A stretch of DNA of 64,000 bases from Pocillopora damicornis. Lineage: Eukaryota. The notes below the pieces were generated by a model. The model saw only the letters and a program-made list of their open reading frames with translations, ran no database searches and was not told where the DNA came from. Below are positions 11,448 to 23,900 of the stretch, in pieces (the first letter of the stretch is position 1; each line of letters starts with the position of its first letter). The stretch covers positions 1 through 64,000 of the forward strand of contig NW_020845652.1 in NCBI RefSeq assembly GCF_003704095.1, in the 5' to 3' direction. The position numbers were made by a program, and so were the translations under genes.

Positions 11448-11639
11448 ATGGCCGAAACTTTAATAGAGGAAGGCGAACGTCCAACTACAGAAAGACTAGA
11501 GCGACAAGTAATCGTTCGTCAGGTCACCCCTGAACTCCCAGTACATTTAAAACTCCTGTTGGCATCAACAATTGTTCTAGTTGTACTCGTCTTAGGGACG
11601 ATAATTTATTTTATATACGCTAAATATGCAAACGAATGA
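11448..11639 (+). CDS. 63-aa single-pass membrane microprotein (upstream ORF), family unknown
   Basis: Strong start context AACAATGG; charged N-terminus, then hydrophobic LKLLLASTIVLVVLVLGTIIYFIY near the C-terminus. The exon continues past the stop to a donor at 11682/11683. Confidence 0.55.
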   Translation: MAETLIEEGERPTTERLERQVIVRQVTPELPVHLKLLLASTIVLVVLVLGTIIYFIYAKYANE

Positions 11640-14097
11640 CAGCAGCGAGAACTACGGAGCAGATACAGGTGTCTGCTCACAGGTAGGCCGATATCTTTGC
11701 TTGTTTTATCCTATGTCCGCCTCGATTTGTAATTCAGACTCAGCTCGCAAGGTGACGATTTCGGATTTTCAGTAAAAAAACTTCACGATTTTAAGCGTTT
11801 ACACGCAACTGGAACTGTTGAAAATAATTATTAACGCTTCGGTTTTTGTTGTCCAATGCCGATATGCCTATAAGATTTTTCAAAGATTTAAAATTAAACA
11901 CACGTTCGTATAGTGTATCCATACAATCGCAATTTTACATTTTCATCCAGAAAATTAGGGAAACAGCTTTAACTTTGAAAAGAAATTTACATTTCGAGGA
12001 TAAACAATATTCCATTCTCTACAAGCCTAAATTGACGTGCTCTTCAAAATGAAAAGCGATAATTTTGGCAAGTTTTGAAAACCTTCTCATTAAATATTCA
12101 CATGAAAAGCAGGTTCTTTGCGAATATTTTAATTCCAGTCGTGTTGGTGTAGATCAAATTTTCCTGAAGAAAACATGAGTTTGAAGCTCATCCTTCACGT
12201 TCGCCAAACAAAATTAACGCTTATTTCTTTTTTTATTTCCTTTCTGTCAGTTTACTAGTGAAGATGCACGGAACGACTTGGACTTTGCCGGAAAACAGAT
12301 GTTTTGTAACGATGAAGAGTTTTGGTAATATTTTACACAATACCCATAAATGTCCTTGGCTCTAATTACCTATTCTAAAGGGAAAAAACTAATTTGGAAT
12401 GTTATTTATGTAATAGTCAGATTTGACGGCAAAAAAATATATTTTGTCGAGACTTTCGGTAACCATGTGAACATTTATGCTAATTCCATTCTGACAGAAA
12501 TGAGTTTTCGCGTTTTATTTTGACTTAACGTGATTTCGGCTTCAACCCAGAATTCGGCAATCAATTAGTTTCACGTGAAAAGAAAATTAAAGAAAAAGCG
12601 TTTTTTCGGTTTTTCATAAAAAGTATGTCGAACTACCAGCTCTGTACGGTCGTTCATCACCTCAGGCTCTTGCATATTCCGTGTAGTTTATCTAGATTAT
12701 CAACTTCAGGATTGTTAAAAGAATATAATGAGCTGCTTCGGAACTTAGTAAAATGTACATTTAAAACCACCGAGACTAAACAATGTAATAGCAGTTTTAA
12801 TTATCCATGGCAAAAAGGATATTACTTACAGCTTATAATGAACCCATTTCCATTATCTTAATGAATAGCACCACGGAAAAAGCCCACAAGGATGCGAATG
12901 GATCGCCACAAACCAAGGCGCAATGGAATGTAAGCAGGTTATGTTTCAGCTGTATATTTTGCACACATACTTGAATGCTAAATGTTGAAACGTTTTCAAA
13001 AAGGTCTTCTTCGAAATATTTTTAAATCCAAAAAGATTACATTCATACCTCTCTCAAAGTTTACTTGAGCAAGTACAGTCTATTTTTTTTAAGTATATCA
13101 CGTTTCCAAACTAAACTAAATCAATGTTACTGCGACAAATTAACTTTTCTGAATTATTTGTCTTAGGACATCACTTTCAGCAGTGATGATCTAGGTCAAA
13201 CTGGTGATTCTGAAAGTAAGTCATACACAGCCATATGAGTTTAAAACGACTGCTGAGCCATATTTGCTTGGCTCAAGCTAGCAGTTGATGCTTACCAGTA
13301 ATTGCAAAAATAGAAGTGTCATATCGGGTTAAGGGTTAAACCCACTCGTGACAAATCAAGTGGACTGAGAAAAGTGGACCCTCCCCCAGATTACCAACAA
13401 TCACGCAAAAGAAATCAAAGGCATTGCGGAGAGACTATGGTTTGAGCCAGACTCCACTAAAATCCACTAAGACAATGTTAATCTTTAACTCAATCATAAT
13501 TTCATCTGGTGGGTTACAGGGTTCAATGTACTTGGTTTGGGAATGGAAACATTATCATGGTTGAACTGGTTCATCATTTTACTTGGCACTGTATTCTTAG
13601 AGAGTACCACAAATTAATTTCCATTCATGCAAAAAGACACCAAAAAGTTTTTTTTGTGCGTGTGTGTGTGTGGTCAATTTTTTAACCACTCAGGCTCTTT
13701 GTTACCCGCTTATTAATTATATCTTGCCAACCTTCTATGATACAAATCATTTTGAGGAAATAAAAATGTCTTTCACCAACAGCATATCCTGATACCTATG
13801 AAAACATGATATCAAGGATGGGTGAAATTGAGAAGACTTTGGTAACTGTTAAAGAAACATTATCCGCAGCAAGTGGTTAGTATGAAACAATCGACAGTAC
13901 GGATGAATGAAACCAGAGAAGCATGGAAAGTAATTCAATACTCTTTTCCTTTTTTCTCAACAGTGCGTTGCCATCTGCTTAATGTTGATGTTGTTACAAC
14001 GTTTAGTCCAGAAATGCTGGACATCCTGAACATAACGAAGGAACAGTGTGAAGACTGTATAAAAGCAATGAAGACTTTGTCTGCTGAGGACTACTGA
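11626..14097 (+). CDS. SYCE3-like protein with acidic N-terminal extension, 155 aa; exons 11626-11682, 12251-12324, 12869-12929, 13167-13215, 13783-13875, 13964-14097
   Basis: Six exons with GT-AG sites and consistent phases (0,2,0,1,1) give one open frame ending YENMISRMGEIEKTLVTVKETLSAASVRCHLLNVDVVTTFSPEMLDILNITKEQCEDCIKAMK, which aligns by eye to vertebrate SYCE3. First exon and start codon are the least certain part. Confidence 0.65.
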
Positions 14098-14908
14098 CCA
14101 AAAAATATATGTATATAGACTTAATGAGAAGGCTCATGAGTACTCTTAAAATTCCTACAATGCGTTTGGAAGAGGCAACTGAATAGCTATTCTTTGTTTA
14201 TTGCACAAAACATAACTGTGCCATATGTAATTTGTAAGAATAACATGGCATAGAGGATAATGACAATTTTCAGCCGTATTTTGATTATGCAAATTGCATG
14301 GTACACAATTTTCACATGTGACCTGGTTGTTGAAAAATAGAAGTGGCCTGAAAGCCCTTTGGTTTGCAATTGATGATTCAGATTAACTTCAATTCTTGGT
14401 GAAGAATTATAAATTTGAAGAATTGCTTCATTTAATACTTTGTACACAACAATGAGTTGTTGATACTATTTATTTCTGATATACAATTTATCTTGCAGCT
14501 AATATTTTACAATGTTGCTATTTATACAATAAACAAGAGAAAAAAATGCAAGGGTTTTTGTCTGTTTATCTAATTTCTAATAAATAACAAGCCTTATGTA
14601 CATTTCTGTCTAAACAATACATATTTTTTGTTTCAAAATATAAAAATTTCCCTTAAAAAATACATCATTTTAGGATGAACTGCCAATTAAATGGGATTCT
14701 ACTTACTTAGAAATAAGTAAATATTCAAACAAAATGTGCACAATTTTCATAATTCCACTGCATGAACATGTCACAATGGTGCAAAGACCAATGACAGTTA
14801 TTTTCCCTCAGGATTTATCTCCCTTAGTTTCCCCATGTTAATGAAAATTGATATCCAGTAATTTTGCATAGCCTTTGAAATTGAAAGTGAATTGTAACCT
14901 TTTTCTTG

Positions 14909-17900
14909 TTAACTATTGGGGCTTTCTGAAACCTGTTGTCTTATCCTCCTCAGAATGCTACTGTTCTTGACTTCTGTAGTATTTGGTCTTGCTTTCGGTG
15001 TTGCAGATAACAACCACTGCACCAATTCTGACTAAAATATGATCAGAACAAAAAAAAATTCAATTTTTAAAGCATATAAAAAGAAATAAAATAAAATATC
15101 AAACAAAACTCACAAGTGTGAAACATTAGCTGGCTCCTTAAAGCTAAAGGCCCAAGTAAGAAATATTCAAATGAGACGACCAAAGGGACCAGCTACCAAC
15201 AGTATATGACATAAATAAGGCACTGTACACTGTACCTGTAGTGGCATCTTTTTTTTAAAGTCACCTGGGATCACCCTCTGTTTAACACCACACATAACCT
15301 GTAATTAACAGTAACAAATACACAGTGAGTCTAAAAAAAAATTAATAAGCCTTTTTCCCACTGGTAATGGAAGCAATAACCAAATGATCAAGTGTTTCAT
15401 TCATTTGTTAAATTCCAGCCCAGCCATTTGTCAGTTTTTGTATGTTTTGAGAATTGAACCTAAATGTTTTTCATACTTGGACCACACCTTTCACTAAAGC
15501 AATAGCCTTCAGTACTAAATTCTGTATGAAATACATACTCTGAAGCCTATTAAGGTACTTTTATTGAAAAATCAAAAAGAGATATTTGTTGATTTCACAA
15601 AACATAGTTAATGGAAGGGAGGTGCCAATAAGAAATGCTGCAAACGCTTAAAAAGAATGCAAACATCAACTTCTCAGTAGAGAAAGTGAAGTCATCCCCT
15701 TAGCACTGTAACAGTCCAAAAAATATTAGAAGCTCACTACCTCAGGCTTGGTTAATAAAACTTACTAGCAATCTTGGTGTTCTTACCTTTATTCTTTCCA
15801 TTTGAGTACCAAATGGACAAAACAACTCAAAAAATATGAGTCCAAGGGAAAAGATGTCTACCTTGTGGGAATATGCCTTTCCCTCCATCTGAATATAATT
15901 AAGAGGAAAGAAATTAAGGTTAGTCTGTACTGGAAACAATAATGCTTTCTGTGAAATCTTTGGGTAACCAATCACAAAAAAAACTTCTAAATAAGAGTAC
16001 TAAAATTTATCTTGAACAGTAATTTTGTAAGATGGGCATTCCTTTCAAATACACAATTATGCTAATAATCTTTGACAGTGAAGAACAGGCCTTTGATAAA
16101 TAAATTACCTACATGTATGCCATACCAATTCAATAGCAGTACAAAACTTATGGCTCAAAAGGCATTTTCCAAGACAAGTGTGTGTCTAAAACATGACAAG
16201 TTACTAGTACTTATACTTGGCACAACTATATCACCCATTGTTCATACTCAGCACTACAAGCAAGCTTACCTGTTCTGGGCTCATATACAACTGTGTGCCA
16301 ACTTGGCTTGTATGATTCGTGTCATCCATTAGAGAATCTAAACAGATACCAAAGAAATATCTAAAAAATGCAGTTTGATAATCTCAGAGCTAACCTACAA
16401 AACAACTTTCAAGTAGCAATAAAAATCTGATTCTTTCAAGCAAGACAATTTACAACTAGTGATGGATGATGTGAGGCCCAGTTGTCTCTGTCAATGTTTC
16501 TAATGGTCCAGTTTGGTTTAAATGTTGCCATACCTTTAATGGGTGTGTCCAGGTTGTTTTCTGATGTGTGGGCCGTCACTAATCCAAAATCACCAACTTT
16601 CACTGAGCCATCCAGTGAAAAGAAGATATTAGATGGCTGTGAAATAGAATAGAGATATATATAAATGTTAGGAAAAATATGATTATTTCAAAGTTGAAAC
16701 TAATATTTACACACTGAGGCAATATTCATTGAACAAAATGTTACCCTGTATTACTAGCCTGTAAATCTATGAGAAAAGGGACTTCAAAGTTACTGGCTAC
16801 ATATTTCACATTTTTGATAGAAAATGAATCACTGTGTCCATAAGCTGATGCAATTACAAAATTAATTTAAGATGAAACATTGCATAAAAAGTGAATTTGC
16901 CATGATCCTTAATTACAAGTTGACTTTATGACCCCTTACAGTTCTGCCTCTTTTCCATTTGTTTGTAAAATTGCCCTTACCTTTAAATCTCTGTGCATAA
17001 GTCCTTTTCCATGAAAGTGCTCAACAGCACCTAGGATCTGTAACATGCAATAAATAATCAGCCTATTTGCTATTAACAATATGTTGGAATTCCATCATCA
17101 TGGAAGATGCATTTTACAGAAATAGAAATGTCTTTATTCCCACATAACAACCTTGGCATTTTCCACGTTCTAGGCTTGGGCTAATTATTTTTAATCAAGA
17201 GGTTTTGCTTCACATGTACACCAGATAATTGATAAGATGAAACTAAGCATCTTAAACCAAATCTTTGTCTGTTTGAGAAGAACAAAAGACAAAACAATGC
17301 CAGTAATGTGCTCATTTCTTAAGTAAAATGATACCTCTTCAAAGACATTCAGGCAGTATCCGTGGTCCCTTTCATGATTAGCTTTGAGCCAGTCTTTCAA
17401 GCTTTCTTGCTGACAAAGCTGCATCTGGATATATAGGTACAATGGTGCTGACAGCTTATCAGCATTGCATTGCTCATCCTGACAGTTATGCTTCTCTCCT
17501 AAAACATAAACATAGTTATAATGTTTAAAGCCAGATGAGCTTAAGGGCCTGGAACTCATTTAATGAATTAAGCATCAGAAAATTGAGTTCCTGGTCATAT
17601 ATTGCATGTTAATACTCATCCAAACACTTTTGGACAGGAAATTTAAACACAAGCATTGGTAAAAATTTTAAGAGTTAAATTCAATTTCTATTCCAAATAG
17701 AAACTGTAAGAGGCAAATATTTGCAAAGTCTTTGGACAAACATTAAGATAGCCTCCAATCATTTTAGCTTCCGTACAAAACTAGAAGAGAGCCTTCAAAG
17801 TTGGTAGCAACATAAGAAAAAAGAAATAATTAACTGATACATTTATCAGCTAAAATCTCTCTGGTTATGTTTTAAAGCTGCTTCACCTCTTTTCAACAAG

Positions 17901-20900
17901 ATAAGAGGCCAAAGAAAGGTGTCTATTTCCCTTTCACAAAACGATTTAAGTGCAATATAACATACTTAAGCAGAACTTGAAAAATTACAGTTTTCTTGTA
18001 TGTTTGGTCACATGTAGGCAAATTATGTTCATCTTACTGGAAAGTAGGGAGTGATGTGAAGAGGTTAACCAGAGTTCTTCTGAGGAGCTTGTTTCCTTGG
18101 ACATGGAATCCTGTGTGCTATCAGATGATGACAATGATCCAATGTTGCCTATGTTAACATCCTACAAAGAAAATAACACAAAATGTAACATGAAAATTCT
18201 AATGAGGGTTGATTCAGACTATTTCCTCGTCACATGGTAGAAATCCTAGGCTCATAATCGAATTCTTAGTTTATAACAGGTCAATGTGGTAACTATTTGA
18301 GGACAGATGTATCTGCACTACCAGGAGTGTAAGATATAAACATTTACTATTAGCTCAACAGTTTTGAGGAGTTTTCTCAAAAAATTCAGCAGGTCAAAAA
18401 AAAAAAAAAATTAAACTTGGCACAACCTTTTAAGCTTACAGTTTATCTATGAACAGCACTCTGTTATATACTGTTATTCTTATCATTACACAAACCTTGT
18501 TTTGACTCAAGCCAGAGTCTGAATGTCTGAAGATGATGCCGTGTGATGAACTTTCCTCCAAGGCATTGCGGTAAAATCCATTTTTGGGTACTGTCAGTTC
18601 TTTGTTACTTGATGAAGCAAATTCTATACTAAAAGAATCACTGATTTCATTTCTATCTAGAAATGCTTCATTCTCTAACTGATGGATATCAATGATCTCT
18701 CCATTAATTTTTCCATTGTCCTCATCTGGATTAGAGTGATAAGATGAATGCCTGGATCGGCTGCAGGAATTTGTTTTCTTCCTTCTTCTGGCCTTCTTTT
18801 CTTCACTTATGCCTGCAGGTTTGCAAAAATATTTCAAGACATTAAGTTTCATACTATAAATTTTGTTTTACCTTATTAACCCTGGAACCTTATGCGTGAC
18901 TAGCATCTAACTTCTCCTTAGAATATAACTACCAGAGCACACACTGAGGTCACAAGAATAAAAAAAAAATGAAGAAACTAAAGAAACTCTTGATTGATAA
19001 ACAAATTCTCCTTGTCAACACCTAAGGAAATATATAGAGTACAGTATGGAGACTATGCATACTGATGTGAAGGTGTAAAAGGGTTAACTCAATGCGTCCT
19101 TTTTTCATTTAATTTCCTTTTGATACTTTCTGAGACATATTGCCAATATATGTAGGCATGTATGAAAATGTATGTTCTACAAACTGTGCTAGAGAAATAT
19201 AGTAATTTAAAATAATCACCAATGATGACTGGAGAGTTTCAGAAATCAGATAGGAGAAATTCAGCAGTTCATATCAGTTCGCCCATCTCAACCAATCATC
19301 AAGTTTCTTTAACTAAAAAAATTAAGAACATAGCCCTAACCAACAGCACCAAATTAACCTCATGAGGCCTCACCATTTTGCAAGTACAATGCATCATTTG
19401 GTAATGCATGCATTGCAATCCCTGAACCAATTGAAGGTGCTTCTGATGGCAATTCACTGAATTCCCTTCATAATCAAACAAACAAATGAAGAAATCAATA
19501 TTAAAAAAAAACAATCAGACTTTTCCATTCAATCATATGTAATTTCCCTTGGAATAATTTTAAATACAAACAAAAGACTGATGAGTCTATACCCTTCTGC
19601 CAACATTTGTGCATCAAAATCATCCTGCCAGCCAACAGGTGGTTCTTCAAACCATGAGTTGTAATATCGCACTATGCTAGGATGTTCAAGTTTTGCCAAG
19701 GCTTTCACTTCCCGTTTCACTTTTTCCCTTGCTGCATCACTGGAGAAAGAGAAAATATAGTATGTCTCCTTAAAGAGAAATATTCAATCAGTTGAAAGAA
19801 CTAATAAAAGTAAAAAAACAATTATGTTCTAATGAGCCTCCAACACTTCCTACATAAAAACTATAAAACTAAATACACACAAGAAAATAACAAAACAATT
19901 TTAACACTGTTAAGATATCTGTGTTATTTATATGGGCTAGGTAACAGTCCTGTACAAAATATGATTTTATATGAAAGCCTACATTAGTTTTGCCTAACAT
20001 CTTGATGGATTTTCCAACAAAAAATTTACACTGTATATGGCTCACATTTTGGCATTCAAAGAAATTTGATAGGCCACCCTCCCCTCTCTTTAACCCTTTA
20101 ATCACTGAGAGCGACTAGCATCTAATTTCTCCTTTCAATATCACCCCTGAATCAAACAATAGGGTCAGGAGAATTAAGGAAATGATGATCAACTAAAGAA
20201 CCTCTTGATTGTTAAACAAATTCTCCTTGCTAGCACATTAGGAAATATATAGAGAGTAGTATAGAGAATATGCATACTGATGTTAAGGTGTAAACGGGTT
20301 AAGCCCCTCTCCCACCCCAACTCCCCCTCCCACCATCACCATAAGGGCTTATATGAGTGGGAGAACATTAAGTAATTGTTTGACAGGTAACAATTGAAGA
20401 TTGATGGTAAAACTTAGCCACCTAACATTCATTTTTGGATTTTGTGGTTCTGAAAAATGTGAGAACTTCAGCCTTTGAGACTTAATTGTTACATGTGACT
20501 ATACAATAGTCCATTTCCAAATAACCTTTAGCCTGTTTTTCAAAATGAGTCCTGGTGCTTATCTTTTCATATGATTAAAAATTGAGCACAAGGCCTTGTT
20601 TTGCCAGGTAATTTACATTCCCTTCATTTTAATTAATATCTGAAACTTATTTCTATTTAAATGAAAGCATATCAACAACATTACAATAAGACAATGACTT
20701 TGTATTATCCTCAAGTCTTAAAGTTTTTTATTAATTCAGCCAATTAATTACCAGTTTGGTAAACTTATCCTCTTGACAGCATAATTGCATTCATCCATTT
20801 TATTCTTCGCTTGAAACACAAGGCCAAAGCCTCCCTTGCCAAGGCACAGTTCATGTTCAAAATCAGTTACATATCTGCAAATGCAAAATAAAAATAACAG

Positions 20901-23900
20901 CTATTTTCTGATGAAAATAATAAACCTTTTGACCTTAATACCAGATATGTTGATATGTTTCAAACACAATATGATGATCCTCAGCTTCAAGTAATGTTGA
21001 AGCAATAAAGGGGGGGGAGTGTAAAGAATGGATAAAGAGAATCAAACAAGTAGTAAAAACACAGACCCAGGAAAATCTTCTGTTCCCCCTTTTATCAATA
21101 AAACTCAGACAAGCAAAGCAATTCTTGGGTTTTGTGCATCACTTTCCATAAACAAATTCAATTGATTAGTAACTTACTTAACTTACAAGCTTGGTGACTC
21201 ACCTTGAGACAAAAGAGTTTGTCTGTGATAAAGAATCTGGTGTGGTTGGAGTTGATGGTTCCTGTGAGTGAGAGAAAGAATACTGAACAAGTTGTGCAGA
21301 AGCCTAACTAGAGTATAAAACAGTTTGCAAGATGAGACTATCATTTCAAGAGAAAAGCCTCTCAGTCTCTGAAAATTGCTTAGAGCATTTTCTCAGTGAG
21401 TGTTTGAATTAGTCAAGGGGAACAACTAACATTAACAACAACCTGATCAGAAATCATTGTCATGTAAGGAGTTTCTTAGGTAGTGTTAATGCTCTGGTTT
21501 GTGGAAACTGATTGGTCTGTTTTTAAGTTTAGTTATTGGCACTGCAAAGCTTGAATAGAAATTGTACATTTAAATCAAGTAAAAATTTTCTTTGGAGGCA
21601 TTAATAACAATGTAAGTTCAGCATGTTCTTGTACCCATCTTTTGCACCTGTTGAATGACATTGGTAAGCTACCTTCCAGCACATAATAATTATGTAACAG
21701 CACAATAACCTGTAAAGATATTTCTCCATATACCTTGATTGTCTCCATTGATGCTGTAGAAGAATGTGGGGATGGTGTTAACGTAGCAGAAGACAACTTC
21801 TGGTCCTGAGTTATTGCTTCAGGCTGAAGTAAAATAAGAGATTTATATCAAATGAATCAATCGACTGTAAGGATTACTACATCATGAAGTTTAACACCAA
21901 ATTTTGTGGAATAAAAGAAAACAAAGAAGTGCTGATAAGATGTGAAAGGCAGAAGGGTTCAAACACTCACATTTCTTTTCTTGGATCCAGGAAAGAAGTG
22001 CAAAATAAACTGGACCATGACAGCAACAGCAGCTGTTACAAACAGGGCACCATACCTTACAAGAGAAACAATTCATGTTTATTCCATCGGTATGGTGTAC
22101 ATGTATTAGTAAATAAACACGATGACTGTAATTGAAATAATTCCTGCAAGCATTAGCTGTGCTCTTAATACTTCATCATATGTTTGCCCCTAAAAGTGCT
22201 TTTTTAAAACACAGAGCAGCTTCTTAAGAAAGAAAAGGTAACACAGCCTGTACCTGAATTATCTAAGAAAGTGTTGCTTTATTGAATTATCAATAATAGT
22301 ATTATCACATTAAGTTACAAAATTTAAATCTAAACTGTAGTTCTTAAATGTACATATAATTTTGTGTCTTGGTTATAACTCATTGTTAAACAATAATGAA
22401 AGTTTTGAAGTTCAATCTTCCTAATCTTGTCTGTGCTTTTGTGGTATTGTATGATAGCATCATTAGTATTGTAAATTAATATTAATAACATTTAAACATT
22501 AAGCTCAAAAAAAAAGTTGCAAAATTTATACTTAGATTCATTTCAGACAGTTATTCTTACCACCATCCTGAGAGATCATTACGATTCAGAGCTTTTTCAG
22601 AAGAGTTCTTGGATTTTCTGTCGAAAACATCCTCAGAGTCTACTGAAAGAAGTTGCTTATCCTGGGTATGTGGAGGAACCACAGGCATCACTTCACCCAA
22701 CAAGTAATAGCCATTATCTACAAATCAATAGGATACCAAAATTAACAGTGTTTCATTACATGCTTAACTTCAAACTGATCTCTCACCCAGGAGGAGTTAA
22801 AACTGGTTTATTTCCTTCTACATGGCTGCCACAGACATCAGTTTTAAAAATTTTCCCTGACTTCCCCTCAACAAAATAAAAGCTTCCCTGACTAATTATA
22901 AAAAAAAAATTGTAACAAACAGTTTGTCAGTTATTTTAGACTCCCTGTGCAAGCTTCCTCTCTGACCATTCATATATTCATCATAATTAACAATTATTCA
23001 CCAAAGTGGAGGTGAATAATTTTTTAAATTAGTATATACCACACAGATACCAAAAACACTTAGTTTATTTCTTTCAATATACTGAAGGAATGGTGGGAAA
23101 TTAAACTCATGATGTACAATTTTGTCTCATCAGCTGCTAGGAGGTGTACAGTGTAGAGTACTTGCTATTCTGATTCACAACCAAACTAGCCAATCAGCCA
23201 CACAAAAGTTGCTATTCAGTTGTGAGGTATGTACTTAATCAGTCAGAATGTTACAGCCTCAACAAAAGATGAGACAAAAGATGGAGTTATGGTTTCAATG
23301 TTCGCTGAATTGTCTTCAAAATTTAAAATTACCACAACTCTAAATAATAGTCAAAGACTTTTCCCTCACTTTAAGGAATTTTTCCCAGACAATTTTCAGA
23401 ACCATGGCAATCATGTTCAACTAGAGAAACCACTAGAAAAGATTGGCGAGTTGCAGCAACTAAAACAAGTCATTCTTGAATAACAACATGTAAGCATAAT
23501 TATCACCTATTTTCAGTCTACTAAATACCTATTTCCCAGGAGGGAGAATGAAATGATCATAGATTCTTCACAACAAGAAAATTTGTAATTCTATCACAAA
23601 GTCAACCTTTGATTTTTATAGGCATCATGTGTTTATCTTTTATTTAAAACTCCTTCTCATGTAAAATAGTCTGAAACACATAATTGATCTCAATTTACCA
23701 AATGGATATTCCAGAGGATTCCACACAGCTAACTCCTTTGTAACCACAGTTGGTGTGCGTGATGGTGAACTTGTCAAATATGGCCTCCATGTAACCTTCC
23801 TGAATCTTTGTGCCACTGCTTTGCCACTAACATCATCAATTCTAGCCACTACATTTTCCTGAGCTGGGTTAAATGGCTCTGATGTCTGAATGTAAACTTG

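What the first reader, a model, noticed from the sequence alone, without database searches (positions are those of the whole stretch)
11626..14097. Candidate SYCE3 (synaptonemal complex central element) homologue in a probable cnidarian
Seen: six small exons, mostly missed by the ORF track, splice into one 155-aa frame. Its last 70 aa (YENMISRMGEIEKTLVTVKETLSAASVRCHLLNVDVVTTFS-PEMLDILNITKEQCEDCIKAMK) align with a single 1-aa gap to human SYCE3 as I recall it (YDNMLKMLSDLNKDLEKLLEEMEKISVQATWMAYDMVVMRTNPTLAESMRRLEDAFVNCKEEME). Shared features are Y-x-N-M, K-x-L, S-V, D-x-V, the hairpin-loop Pro, and the late Cys and Met in register. A phase-1 intron (13876-13963) splits the Val codon of S-V; I recall the human SYCE3 coding intron at the same place, which needs checking. 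Established: SYCE2, TEX12, SYCP1 and SYCP3 are traced to Hydra, whereas SYCE3 has been described as vertebrate-restricted. Inference: SYCE3 may predate the cnidarian-bilaterian split, here with an acidic extension of about 85 aa.
Basis: partly seen in the sequence, partly recalled or inferred. Interest (0 to 1): 0.88.

Follow-up and report, generated by a model that had tools for sequence, protein, structure and literature searches.

The report
Coral homologue of synaptonemal protein SYCE3
This coral gene is real, spliced and expressed. It belongs to an unnamed protein family, found from sponges to amphioxus, that matches vertebrate SYCE3, the one chromosome-pairing (synaptonemal complex) protein so far thought missing outside vertebrates.

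Summary
Six GT-AG exons (11626-14097, + strand) join into a 155-aa frame. All five junctions appear in RNA contigs of four runs from four studies. The gene is single-copy.

Its C-terminal 70 aa define a conserved family of "uncharacterized" proteins in Porifera, Cnidaria (including Nematostella LOC5520931), Mollusca, Brachiopoda, Nemertea, Echinodermata, Hemichordata and Cephalochordata. No vertebrate was among the 30 members I looked up.

Single sequences stay below Pfam's Synaptonemal_3 cut-off (best 25.6 bits against 27). Profiles do better:
- A cnidarian+sponge profile searched against all PDB sequences puts mouse SYCE3 (4R3Q/6H86) first, E 4.3e-4. The wider family profile gives E 2.9e-6, and the next hit is 0.049.
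- Tyr-11, Ser-Val, Asp-45, loop Pro-53 and Cys-69 are kept. Trp-41/Tyr-44 are not.
- Language-model look-alikes of the coral and sponge proteins are SYCE3 clusters at ranks 1-3.

The phase-1 intron at S|V is conserved in six species of four phyla. Its position in vertebrates, germ-line expression and SC localisation remain untested.

Published work, including a 2026 Nematostella paper, calls SYCE3 vertebrate-only, so this is a new and testable candidate. The scan's earlier notes on this stretch are this same finding and a note on the upstream ORF.

The parts
11423..11682 (+). Exon 1 as seen in RNA. It holds the 5' leader (with the upstream 63-aa ORF) and the first 19 codons of the SYCE3-like ORF from ATG 11626.
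   Evidence: RNA contigs begin at 11423-11439 and run to the donor at 11682. The N-terminus MQTND..ENYG is conserved in all scleractinian orthologues.
12251..12324 (+). Exon 2 (N-terminal extension)
   Evidence: Junctions 11682/12251 and 12324/12869 are each seen in four RNA runs; frame checked. For 12324/12869, three runs show it directly. X9 shows the same junction with a one-base change at the exon's first base.
12869..12929 (+). Exon 3 (N-terminal extension)
   Evidence: Junction 12929/13167 in four runs.
12930..13166 (+). Intron 3, 237 nt. It is spliced out in some RNA contigs and retained in others; when retained it ends the frame early.
   Evidence: Spliced in all four runs. Retained in transcript contigs L001-L004.
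13167..13215 (+). Exon 4 (end of the acidic, Ser-rich extension)
   Evidence: Junction 13215/13783 in four runs.
13783..13875 (+). Exon 5: the start of the SYCE3-like core and most of helix alpha1 (TYPDTYENMISRMGEIEKTL...AAS)
   Evidence: Matches family profile positions 75-106. Aligns to SYCE3 residues 8-36. The helix starts at the Tyr in the AF2 model.
13876..13963 (+). Phase-1 intron inside the Val codon that follows Ser
   Evidence: The same position and phase are found in Nematostella, Branchiostoma, Ptychodera, Amphimedon and a second sponge-like contig.
13964..14097 (+). Exon 6 coding part: the end of alpha1 (VRCHLLNVDVVT), the loop (F-S-P) and alpha2 with the C-x-x-C motif, then the stop at 14095-14097
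   Evidence: Family profile match E 1.1e-19. Near-invariant L, D, T, F, P, C, C. Aligns to SYCE3 residues 37-84.
11448..11639 (+). Upstream 63-aa ORF with one hydrophobic segment. It lies on the same exon and overlaps the main ATG by 14 nt.
   Evidence: The peptide is conserved in an Orbicella mRNA contig, L011.
14900..23822 (-). Convergent neighbour, an EIF2AK3/PERK-like kinase gene. Its 3' end overlaps the 3' end of the SYCE3-like transcript. The start coordinate is approximate, and the gene runs on beyond 23822.
   Evidence: CT..AC joint at 15031/15236. The L001 minus-strand ORF maps here and matches EIF2AK3 at E 1e-101. A large kinase gene (Pkinase domain, 973-1089 aa) lies tail-to-tail in Nematostella, Branchiostoma and Ptychodera too; I did not check that those three are EIF2AK3.

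Best explanation
The locus is a single-copy, expressed gene for a 155-aa protein.

Shown:
- Its C-terminal ~70 aa form a helix - short Pro loop - helix unit.
- This unit is the coral member of a conserved family present from sponges to amphioxus.
- The family is homologous to vertebrate SYCE3.

Inferred:
- It is the non-vertebrate counterpart (orthologue) of SYCE3.
- It works the same way. In mammals, SYCE3 hairpins pair into a four-helix dimer, open at the proline loop to chain end-on, bind the N-terminal coiled coil of SYCP1, and recruit SYCE1-SIX6OS1 and SYCE2-TEX12 to build the central element of the synaptonemal complex. Cnidarians have all of those partners.

The ~85-aa acidic, Ser-rich N-terminal part is a lineage-variable extension whose start is conserved in corals. 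A near-invariant C-x-x-C on helix 2, facing a Cys/His pair on helix 1, is a family feature that vertebrate SYCE3 has lost.
For: Gene reality
- Five junctions in four RNA runs.
- Full-length orthologues of 147-161 aa in Desmophyllum, Orbicella, Oculina, Porites and Montipora, with a conserved start.
- One locus in the genome.

Family
- 117 representatives at E<=1e-3 among 1.84 billion proteins.
- Named members come from four sponge classes, anthozoans and a scyphozoan, eight molluscs, Lingula, Tubulanus, Diadema, Ptychodera and Branchiostoma. All are 'uncharacterized', and none is a vertebrate.

Link to SYCE3
- Family profiles against all PDB sequences put SYCE3 first. E is 4.3e-4 and 23.8 bits with cnidaria+sponge only, covering SYCE3 residues 8-84. 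E is 2.9e-6 and 30.6 bits with 50 members, covering residues 3-85.
- PF15191 is the most frequently hit Pfam family: 10 of 22 and 12 of 50 members.
- Ptychodera scores 25.6 bits, E 1.1e-5, its best Pfam hit. P0126 scores 25.1 bits.
- ESM Atlas look-alikes at ranks 1-3 are SYCE3 clusters for the coral core (0.88/0.87/0.83) and for Amphimedon (0.90/0.90/0.89).

Anatomy
- AF2 predicts a helix from the Tyr to the residue before F-S-P, then a second helix. This matches SYCE3 alpha1 10-48 and alpha2 55-85 (PMC6556580).
- Tyr-11, Leu-15 (as Ile), Asp-45, Pro-53 and Cys-69 are kept in the alignment.

Orthology within invertebrates
- The same phase-1 intron occurs in six species.
- A large kinase gene lies tail-to-tail in the coral, Nematostella, Branchiostoma and Ptychodera. 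In the coral it is EIF2AK3/PERK-like.
- An FAA_hydrolase gene lies upstream in both coral and Nematostella.

Context
Against: - No single member reaches Pfam's gathering score. The coral pieces alone give no SYCE3 hit.
- The mammalian self-assembly aromatics Trp-41/Tyr-44 are Leu/Val here.
- The invariant C-x-x-C (98% and 95%) and the frequent His (68%) have no counterpart in SYCE3 and could point to a different chemistry.
- Nothing here shows germ-line or meiotic expression. The RNA runs are whole-colony material.
- Fold searches were uninformative and the dimer job gave no verdict.
- From memory only: human SYCE3 does not lie next to EIF2AK3, so synteny gives no support across to vertebrates.
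- The upstream ORF with a strong start context may limit translation of this ORF.
Confidence: 0.7

Rival explanations
1. The family is a real but distinct ancient helical-hairpin protein, a distant paralogue of SYCE3. Its own function would perhaps depend on metal or redox chemistry through the Cys/His and C-x-x-C residues. Vertebrates would have lost it, while SYCE3 arose or diverged separately.
For: C-x-x-C is 95-98% conserved and His 68%, and both are absent from SYCE3. Trp-41/Tyr-44 are not kept. All single-sequence Pfam scores are below the cut-off. There are no expression data. Tail-to-tail kinase synteny was seen in the four non-vertebrate genomes examined; no vertebrate locus could be checked.
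Against: The phyletic pattern is complementary: no vertebrate among the named members. The gene is single-copy in the coral. The match covers the full length of SYCE3, including functional Tyr-11 and Pro-53. The deuterostome members score closest to PF15191. Cnidarians have every SYCE3 partner but no other SYCE3 candidate (PMC13693662).
Confidence: 0.2
2. The resemblance to SYCE3 is convergence or chance between two short amphipathic helical hairpins, with no common descent.
For: Short helical proteins give many weak hits: TRPM_tetra, DUF5798, ACBP4_C and FANCL_d2 also recur. Identity is only about one residue in five. The Atlas tool warns that scores under 0.9 are only leads.
Against: SYCE3 is first of 177,635 PDB sequences by 3-4 orders of magnitude, with low bias scores, in two profiles. 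The PDB is rich in coiled coils, and none comes near. The target was named before the test. Two methods that share no machinery agree (HMMER and language-model features), and two members about 30% identical to each other give the same answer.
Confidence: 0.07
3. The 155-aa frame is not the translated product. The transcript would serve the upstream 63-aa membrane microprotein, or only the C-terminal 67 aa from Met-89 would be made.
For: The upstream ATG at 11448 has A at -3 and G at +4, and it overlaps the main ATG. Intron 3 is retained in several transcript contigs, which would leave only Met-89 onward readable.
Against: The N-terminus MQTND..ENYG and the full frame are conserved across robust and complex corals. 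The core is under strong purifying selection across phyla. The fully spliced form is present in all four runs.
Confidence: 0.03

Closest known systems
SYCE3 (synaptonemal complex central element protein 3; Pfam PF15191 Synaptonemal_3; PDB 4R3Q, 6H86)
   Same: - The core has the same size and the same helix - Pro loop - helix layout.
- The profile alignment covers residues 3-85 of the 88-aa mouse protein end to end.
- Tyr-11, Asn-13, Met-14, Ser-36-Val-37, Asp-45, Pro-53 and Cys-69 are shared.
- The core is encoded by two exons; mouse Syce3 also has two coding exons (PMC3102746).
   Different: - It scores below Pfam's gathering cut-off.
- It is one residue shorter in the loop.
- Trp-41/Tyr-44 are replaced by Leu/Val.
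- It has an extra invariant Cys, giving C-x-x-C, and a Cys/His pair on helix 1.
- Helix 2 is about 6-8 residues shorter in corals.
- The N-terminal extension is about 85 aa in corals and 20-80 aa in other phyla, against about 10 aa in mammals.
- No functional data exist.
Other small helical proteins that ranked lower in the language-model search (RCDG1/C4orf46 PF15725, BORCS7 PF16088)
   Same: They are proteins of about 80-100 aa that are mostly alpha-helical. They ranked 4-8 in the Atlas lists.
   Different: No HMMER signal to either family appeared in any of the Pfam scans. They always ranked below the three SYCE3 clusters.
SYCE2, TEX12, SYCE1 and SIX6OS1 of cnidarians (central-element proteins already traced to Hydra or Nematostella)
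   Same: They show the same evolutionary pattern: a central-element component first thought restricted to vertebrates or bilaterians and later found in non-bilaterians through remote-homology searches (PMC4132317, PMC13693662).
   Different: They are different proteins with no sequence relation to this one. Those have experimental support in cnidarians (yeast two-hybrid assays and mutants), and this one has none.

Membership tests
SYCE3 / Pfam PF15191 Synaptonemal_3 | Score at or above Pfam's gathering cut-off (27 bits) for a single sequence | tested here: not met
   The coral pieces and the core P0001 give no hit. Desmophyllum scores 13.2 bits, Branchiostoma 15.3, P0126 25.1 and Ptychodera 25.6. 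This is a curation boundary, not a biological feature.
SYCE3 / Pfam PF15191 Synaptonemal_3 | Statistically significant, full-length, collinear sequence similarity to SYCE3 | tested here: met
   With family profiles against 177,635 PDB sequences, SYCE3 ranks first. E is 4.3e-4 (cnidaria+sponge) and 2.9e-6 (50 members), covering residues 8-84 and 3-85 of 88. PF15191 is the commonest weak Pfam hit.
SYCE3 / Pfam PF15191 Synaptonemal_3 | Two helices joined by a short loop with the proline (Pro-53) that switches between closed and open states | tested here: met
   The AF2 model has a helix at 16-54, a break at F-S, and a helix at 57-79 starting at Pro. The Pro is 99% conserved in the family and aligns with Pro-53. 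The switching behaviour itself is not tested.
SYCE3 / Pfam PF15191 Synaptonemal_3 | Self-assembly residues: Tyr-11/Leu-15 at the alpha1 tip and Trp-41/Tyr-44 (PMC6556580) | tested here: inconclusive
   Tyr-11 aligns with Tyr, and Leu-15 with Ile (Ile, Met or Leu in the family). Trp-41 aligns with Leu and Tyr-44 with Val, which are hydrophobic but not aromatic.
SYCE3 / Pfam PF15191 Synaptonemal_3 | Antiparallel dimer forming a four-helix bundle | tested here: inconclusive
   The homodimer job gave 'no answer' with score 0.02. Monomer fold searches returned only generic long helices.
SYCE3 / Pfam PF15191 Synaptonemal_3 | Meiosis-specific expression and localisation to the central element; binding to SYCP1 and SYCE1 | not testable with these tools
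   The RNA runs that hold the transcript are whole-colony or environmental. No paper in the library mentions any of the locus names.
SYCE3 / Pfam PF15191 Synaptonemal_3 | Shared coding-intron position with vertebrate SYCE3 | not testable with these tools
   The phase-1 intron at S|V(M) is conserved in six non-vertebrate species. Mouse Syce3 has exactly two coding exons (PMC3102746), but no vertebrate gene sequence was available here. The predicted site is between codons 36 and 37, after the first base of codon 37.

The most novel reading that the evidence does not exclude
The ancestral SYCE3 was a metal- or disulfide-stapled hairpin.
- The Cys/His pair on helix 1 lies 12-13 residues before the loop proline. 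The near-invariant C-x-x-C on helix 2 lies 13-16 residues after it.
- The two would therefore face each other in the closed hairpin.
- They could lock or release the closed-to-open loop switch that drives central-element polymerisation. That would give a chemical control of synapsis that vertebrates lost.
- In corals the gene also shares its first exon with a conserved membrane microprotein ORF, which suggests coupled translation of two products.
Probability: 0.2. Interest if true: 0.85.

Novelty: new variant of a known kind. Interest (0 to 1): 0.8.

Why it matters
SYCE3 is the adapter that turns the SYCP1 lattice into a mature synaptonemal complex in mammals, and its loss blocks synapsis and fertility in mice. 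It has been described as vertebrate-specific since 2011-2013. A 2026 functional study of the Nematostella complex lists it as the one central-element protein that cnidarians lack.

If this family is its counterpart, the whole mammalian-type central element (SYCE1, SYCE2, SYCE3, TEX12, SIX6OS1) dates to the base of animals. Nematostella LOC5520931 then becomes a directly testable candidate with the yeast two-hybrid, antibody and CRISPR tools already in use there.

The family alignment also shows which SYCE3 residues are ancient (Tyr-11, Asp-45, Pro-53, Cys-69) and which are vertebrate novelties (Trp-41/Tyr-44). That bears on how self-assembly evolved.

Tried and rejected
- Exon-by-exon Pfam scans of the window gave only noise: TRPM_tetra and Glutaredoxin at E>0.03.
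- A six-frame search of the whole genome with PF15191 found nothing, but nothing rang in the controls either, so it says nothing.
- phmmer of the 67-aa spliced core against the PDB gave no SYCE3 hit. A single sequence is too weak; profiles were needed.
- Foldseek against the PDB gave no match. VIA-align against 48,161 chains gave only long coiled coils at Z 5.4-5.7 with rmsd 4-12 Å, i.e. a generic helix.
- The homodimer prediction ended in 'no answer' with score 0.02. This is no evidence either way.
- I first took the 'VQCHLLNVDVVTQFDP' fragments (P0050-P0055) for fish SYCE3 exons. I rejected this: their contig L005 has the gene order of the Amphimedon locus (PCRF ... gene ... Calx-beta) and a sponge-like helix 1.
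- A literature search for the locus names of six members found nothing.
- The two mouse SYCE3 papers I read give no intron coordinate.
- The joined 155-aa model was not sent to any search, fold or look-up tool. I joined the exons only inside a local script to check the frame. Otherwise I used exon references and database proteins of the same gene (P0001, P0012, P0014).
Full report
**1. The observation**

The region holds six exons with canonical GT..AG borders: 11626-11682, 12251-12324, 12869-12929, 13167-13215, 13783-13875 and 13964-14097. Joined inside a local script, they give 468 nt, i.e. 155 codons and a stop. The last intron (13876-13963) is phase 1 and splits G|TG, the Val codon behind Ser.

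Contigs of four poly(A)/oligo-dT RNA runs from four studies (coral and marine metatranscriptomes) were laid on 10200-15800. Every one of the five junctions is present in them. Those contigs begin at 11423-11439, so exon 1 extends about 200 nt upstream of the ATG.

The genome has 234.35 Mb in 4393 contigs. From memory, these figures match the Pocillopora damicornis assembly. The nearest proteins come from pocilloporid-like RNA-seq assemblies.

The joined model was never sent to a search tool. I used exon references and database proteins of the same gene.

**2. The same gene elsewhere**

A search with the exon-6 frame found P0001 and P0004, which are 67-aa spliced products of exons 5-6 from RNA contigs. 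A second search found full-length products: P0012 (155 aa, five substitutions from the window) and orthologues of 147-161 aa in Desmophyllum, Orbicella, Oculina, Porites and Montipora.
- The N-terminus MQTND..ENYG is conserved in them, so the ATG at 11626 is the conserved start.
- The middle of the extension is variable, acidic and Ser-rich.
- The last 75 residues are nearly invariant.
- The coral genome has one copy.

**3. A pan-metazoan family**

The profile of the scleractinian proteins reached Nematostella (P0027; LOC5520931) and the sponge Amphimedon (P0048, E 3e-9). A profile of 22 cnidarian and sponge sequences (A2) was run by HMMER over 1.84 billion representatives. It found 117 proteins at E<=1e-3, 38 of them at E<=1e-10.

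Thirty of these were looked up by exact sequence. They belong to:
- sponges: Corticium, Sycon, Oscarella
- cnidarians: Actinia, and what I take from its identifier to be Aurelia
- molluscs: Solemya, Patella, Mytilus, Magallana, Mizuhopecten, Littorina, Aplysia, Biomphalaria
- other phyla: Lingula (brachiopod), Tubulanus (nemertean), Diadema (echinoderm), Ptychodera (hemichordate), Branchiostoma (cephalochordate)

Every name is 'uncharacterized' or 'hypothetical', and none is a vertebrate.

Over about 160 sequences the most conserved residues are the loop Pro (99%), two Cys in C-x-x-C (98% and 95%), Leu (94%), Phe (91%), Asp (85%), Thr (82%), and the Val behind the intron (77%, Met 10%). His is at 68%.

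**4. Orthology among the non-vertebrates**

The phase-1 intron sits in the Val/Met codon directly behind Ser in the coral, Nematostella, Branchiostoma, Ptychodera, Amphimedon and a second sponge-like contig.

The gene lies tail-to-tail with a large kinase gene in the coral, Nematostella, Branchiostoma and Ptychodera. In the coral that neighbour matches EIF2AK3/PERK at E 1e-101 and maps to about 14.9-23.8 kb on the minus strand. I did not check that the kinase genes in the other three species are EIF2AK3.

An FAA_hydrolase gene lies upstream on the minus strand in both the coral and Nematostella. In sponges the neighbours differ: PCRF and a Calx-beta cadherin.

**5. Is it SYCE3?**

Single sequences are too weak.
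- The exon pieces and the 67-aa core give no Synaptonemal_3 hit.
- phmmer of the core finds no SYCE3 in the PDB.
- Across members, however, PF15191 is the Pfam family hit most often: 10 of 22 (best E 0.0035) and 12 of 50 (best 1.1e-5).
- The best single scores are 25.6 bits for Ptychodera, whose best Pfam hit it is, and 25.1 bits for P0126. The cut-off is 27. Branchiostoma gives E 0.019.

The decisive test was a profile search of all 177,635 distinct PDB sequences.

| Profile | Top hit | E-value | Bits | SYCE3 residues | Next hit |
|---|---|---|---|---|---|
| Cnidaria + sponge (A2) | mouse SYCE3 (4R3Q/6H86) | 4.3e-4 | 23.8 | 8-84 of 88 | 0.76 |
| 50-member family (A4) | mouse SYCE3 (4R3Q/6H86) | 2.9e-6 | 30.6 | 3-85 of 88 | 0.049 |

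Bias scores are small. The PDB is full of coiled coils, and none comes close.

A method with no shared machinery agrees. Language-model look-alikes among 7.7 million clusters are SYCE3 clusters at ranks 1-3. This holds for the coral core (0.88, 0.87, 0.83, with 182, 186 and 169 shared features) and for the Amphimedon protein (0.90, 0.90, 0.89, with 199, 207 and 191). The tool's own caveats apply: scores under 0.9 are leads, and only four of the ten best hits share the family.

**6. Anatomy against the solved protein**

SYCE3 has alpha1 at 10-48, a loop with Pro-53, and alpha2 at 55-85. It self-assembles through Tyr-11/Leu-15, through Trp-41/Tyr-44, and by opening of the Pro-53 loop. It binds SYCP1 in the open form (PMC6556580, PMC7614228).

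In the AF2 model of a coral core (mean pLDDT 77.8), the first helix starts at the aligned Tyr and ends just before F-S-P. The second helix starts at the Pro.

In the alignment:

| Mouse SYCE3 | Coral / family |
|---|---|
| Tyr-11 | Tyr |
| Asn-13, Met-14 | Asn, Met |
| Leu-15 | Ile |
| Ser-36, Val-37 | Ser, Val (the intron site) |
| Trp-41 | Leu |
| Tyr-44 | Val |
| Asp-45 | Asp |
| Pro-53 | Pro |
| Phe-66 | Cys |
| Cys-69 | Cys |

So the tip and loop determinants are kept, and the aromatic lateral interface is not. The family has an extra Cys that makes C-x-x-C.

On helix 1, the Cys/His pair lies 12-13 residues before the Pro. On helix 2, the C-x-x-C lies 13-16 residues after it. In a closed hairpin the two would face each other. 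This is my inference; no coordinates were available to check it.

**7. What the literature says**

- SYCE3 was described as present 'from fish to human' (PMC3102746).
- It is called vertebrate-specific in the summary of Fraune et al. 2013 given in PMC4132317.
- The 2026 Nematostella study found SYCE1, SIX6OS1 and TEX12. [quoted passage not shown]
- No paper in the library links SYCE3 to any invertebrate protein or names any of the loci found here.

**8. Verdict**

| Claim | My probability |
|---|---|
| The gene is real and expressed | about 0.98 |
| It is homologous to SYCE3 | about 0.9 |
| It is the functional counterpart in the synaptonemal complex | about 0.65-0.7 |

Homology rests on the profile hit, the recurrence in Pfam, the language-model ranks and the matching helix and loop boundaries. 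The functional claim is inferred from three points: the complementary phyletic pattern, single-copy status, and the presence of all partners in cnidarians.

Three things were not tested: germ-line expression, localisation, and the intron position in vertebrates. Mouse has two coding exons, which fits, but the site is unknown to me.

The main rival is a distinct ancient paralogue with its own chemistry, which I put at about 0.2.

**9. What failed**

Both fold searches were uninformative and the dimer job gave no verdict. I do not use any of them as evidence.

Noticed in passing
window 11448-11639 (+); L011 1-98: A 63-aa ORF with one hydrophobic segment lies on the same first exon and overlaps the main ATG by 14 nt. 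Its ATG has A at -3 and G at +4 and sits only about 10-25 nt from the 5' ends of the RNA contigs. Its C-terminal 32 aa are conserved in an Orbicella mRNA contig (LKLLLASTIFLVTLVLGTIVYFIYAKYANE, with the same overlap).
   Followed up: partly
window 12930-13166; L001-L004: Intron 3 (237 nt) is retained in the longest public transcript contigs of this gene from four runs. The spliced junction is present in the four runs laid here. Retention ends the frame after 78 aa and leaves only Met-89 onward readable.
   Followed up: partly
window 13999-14001: The assembly reads ACG (Thr) in VVT-T-F. All four RNA runs read T at 14000 (ATG, Met), and every other cnidarian orthologue has Met there. It may be a strain allele or an assembly error at a strongly conserved position. 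Position 13843 (Val against Ala) behaves likewise in three runs.
   Followed up: no
window ~14900-23822 (-), joint 15031/15236: An EIF2AK3/PERK-like kinase gene converges on the SYCE3-like gene. RNA contigs run unbroken across both 3' ends, so the two 3' UTRs overlap. A tail-to-tail pairing with a large kinase gene is also seen in Nematostella, Branchiostoma and Ptychodera.
   Followed up: partly
window 6242-7747 (-): An FAA_hydrolase (FAHD-like) gene lies upstream on the minus strand (PF01557, E 3e-29 and 2e-12 for two exons). Nematostella has the same neighbour in the same orientation, which gives a three-gene conserved block.
   Followed up: partly
L005 5890-6219; L012 5001-5521: A 1.13-Mb ENA contig of unnamed origin carries the family member between PCRF-like and Calx-beta genes, the same order as the Amphimedon locus. 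It is therefore probably a demosponge genome inside a metagenome assembly.
   Followed up: partly
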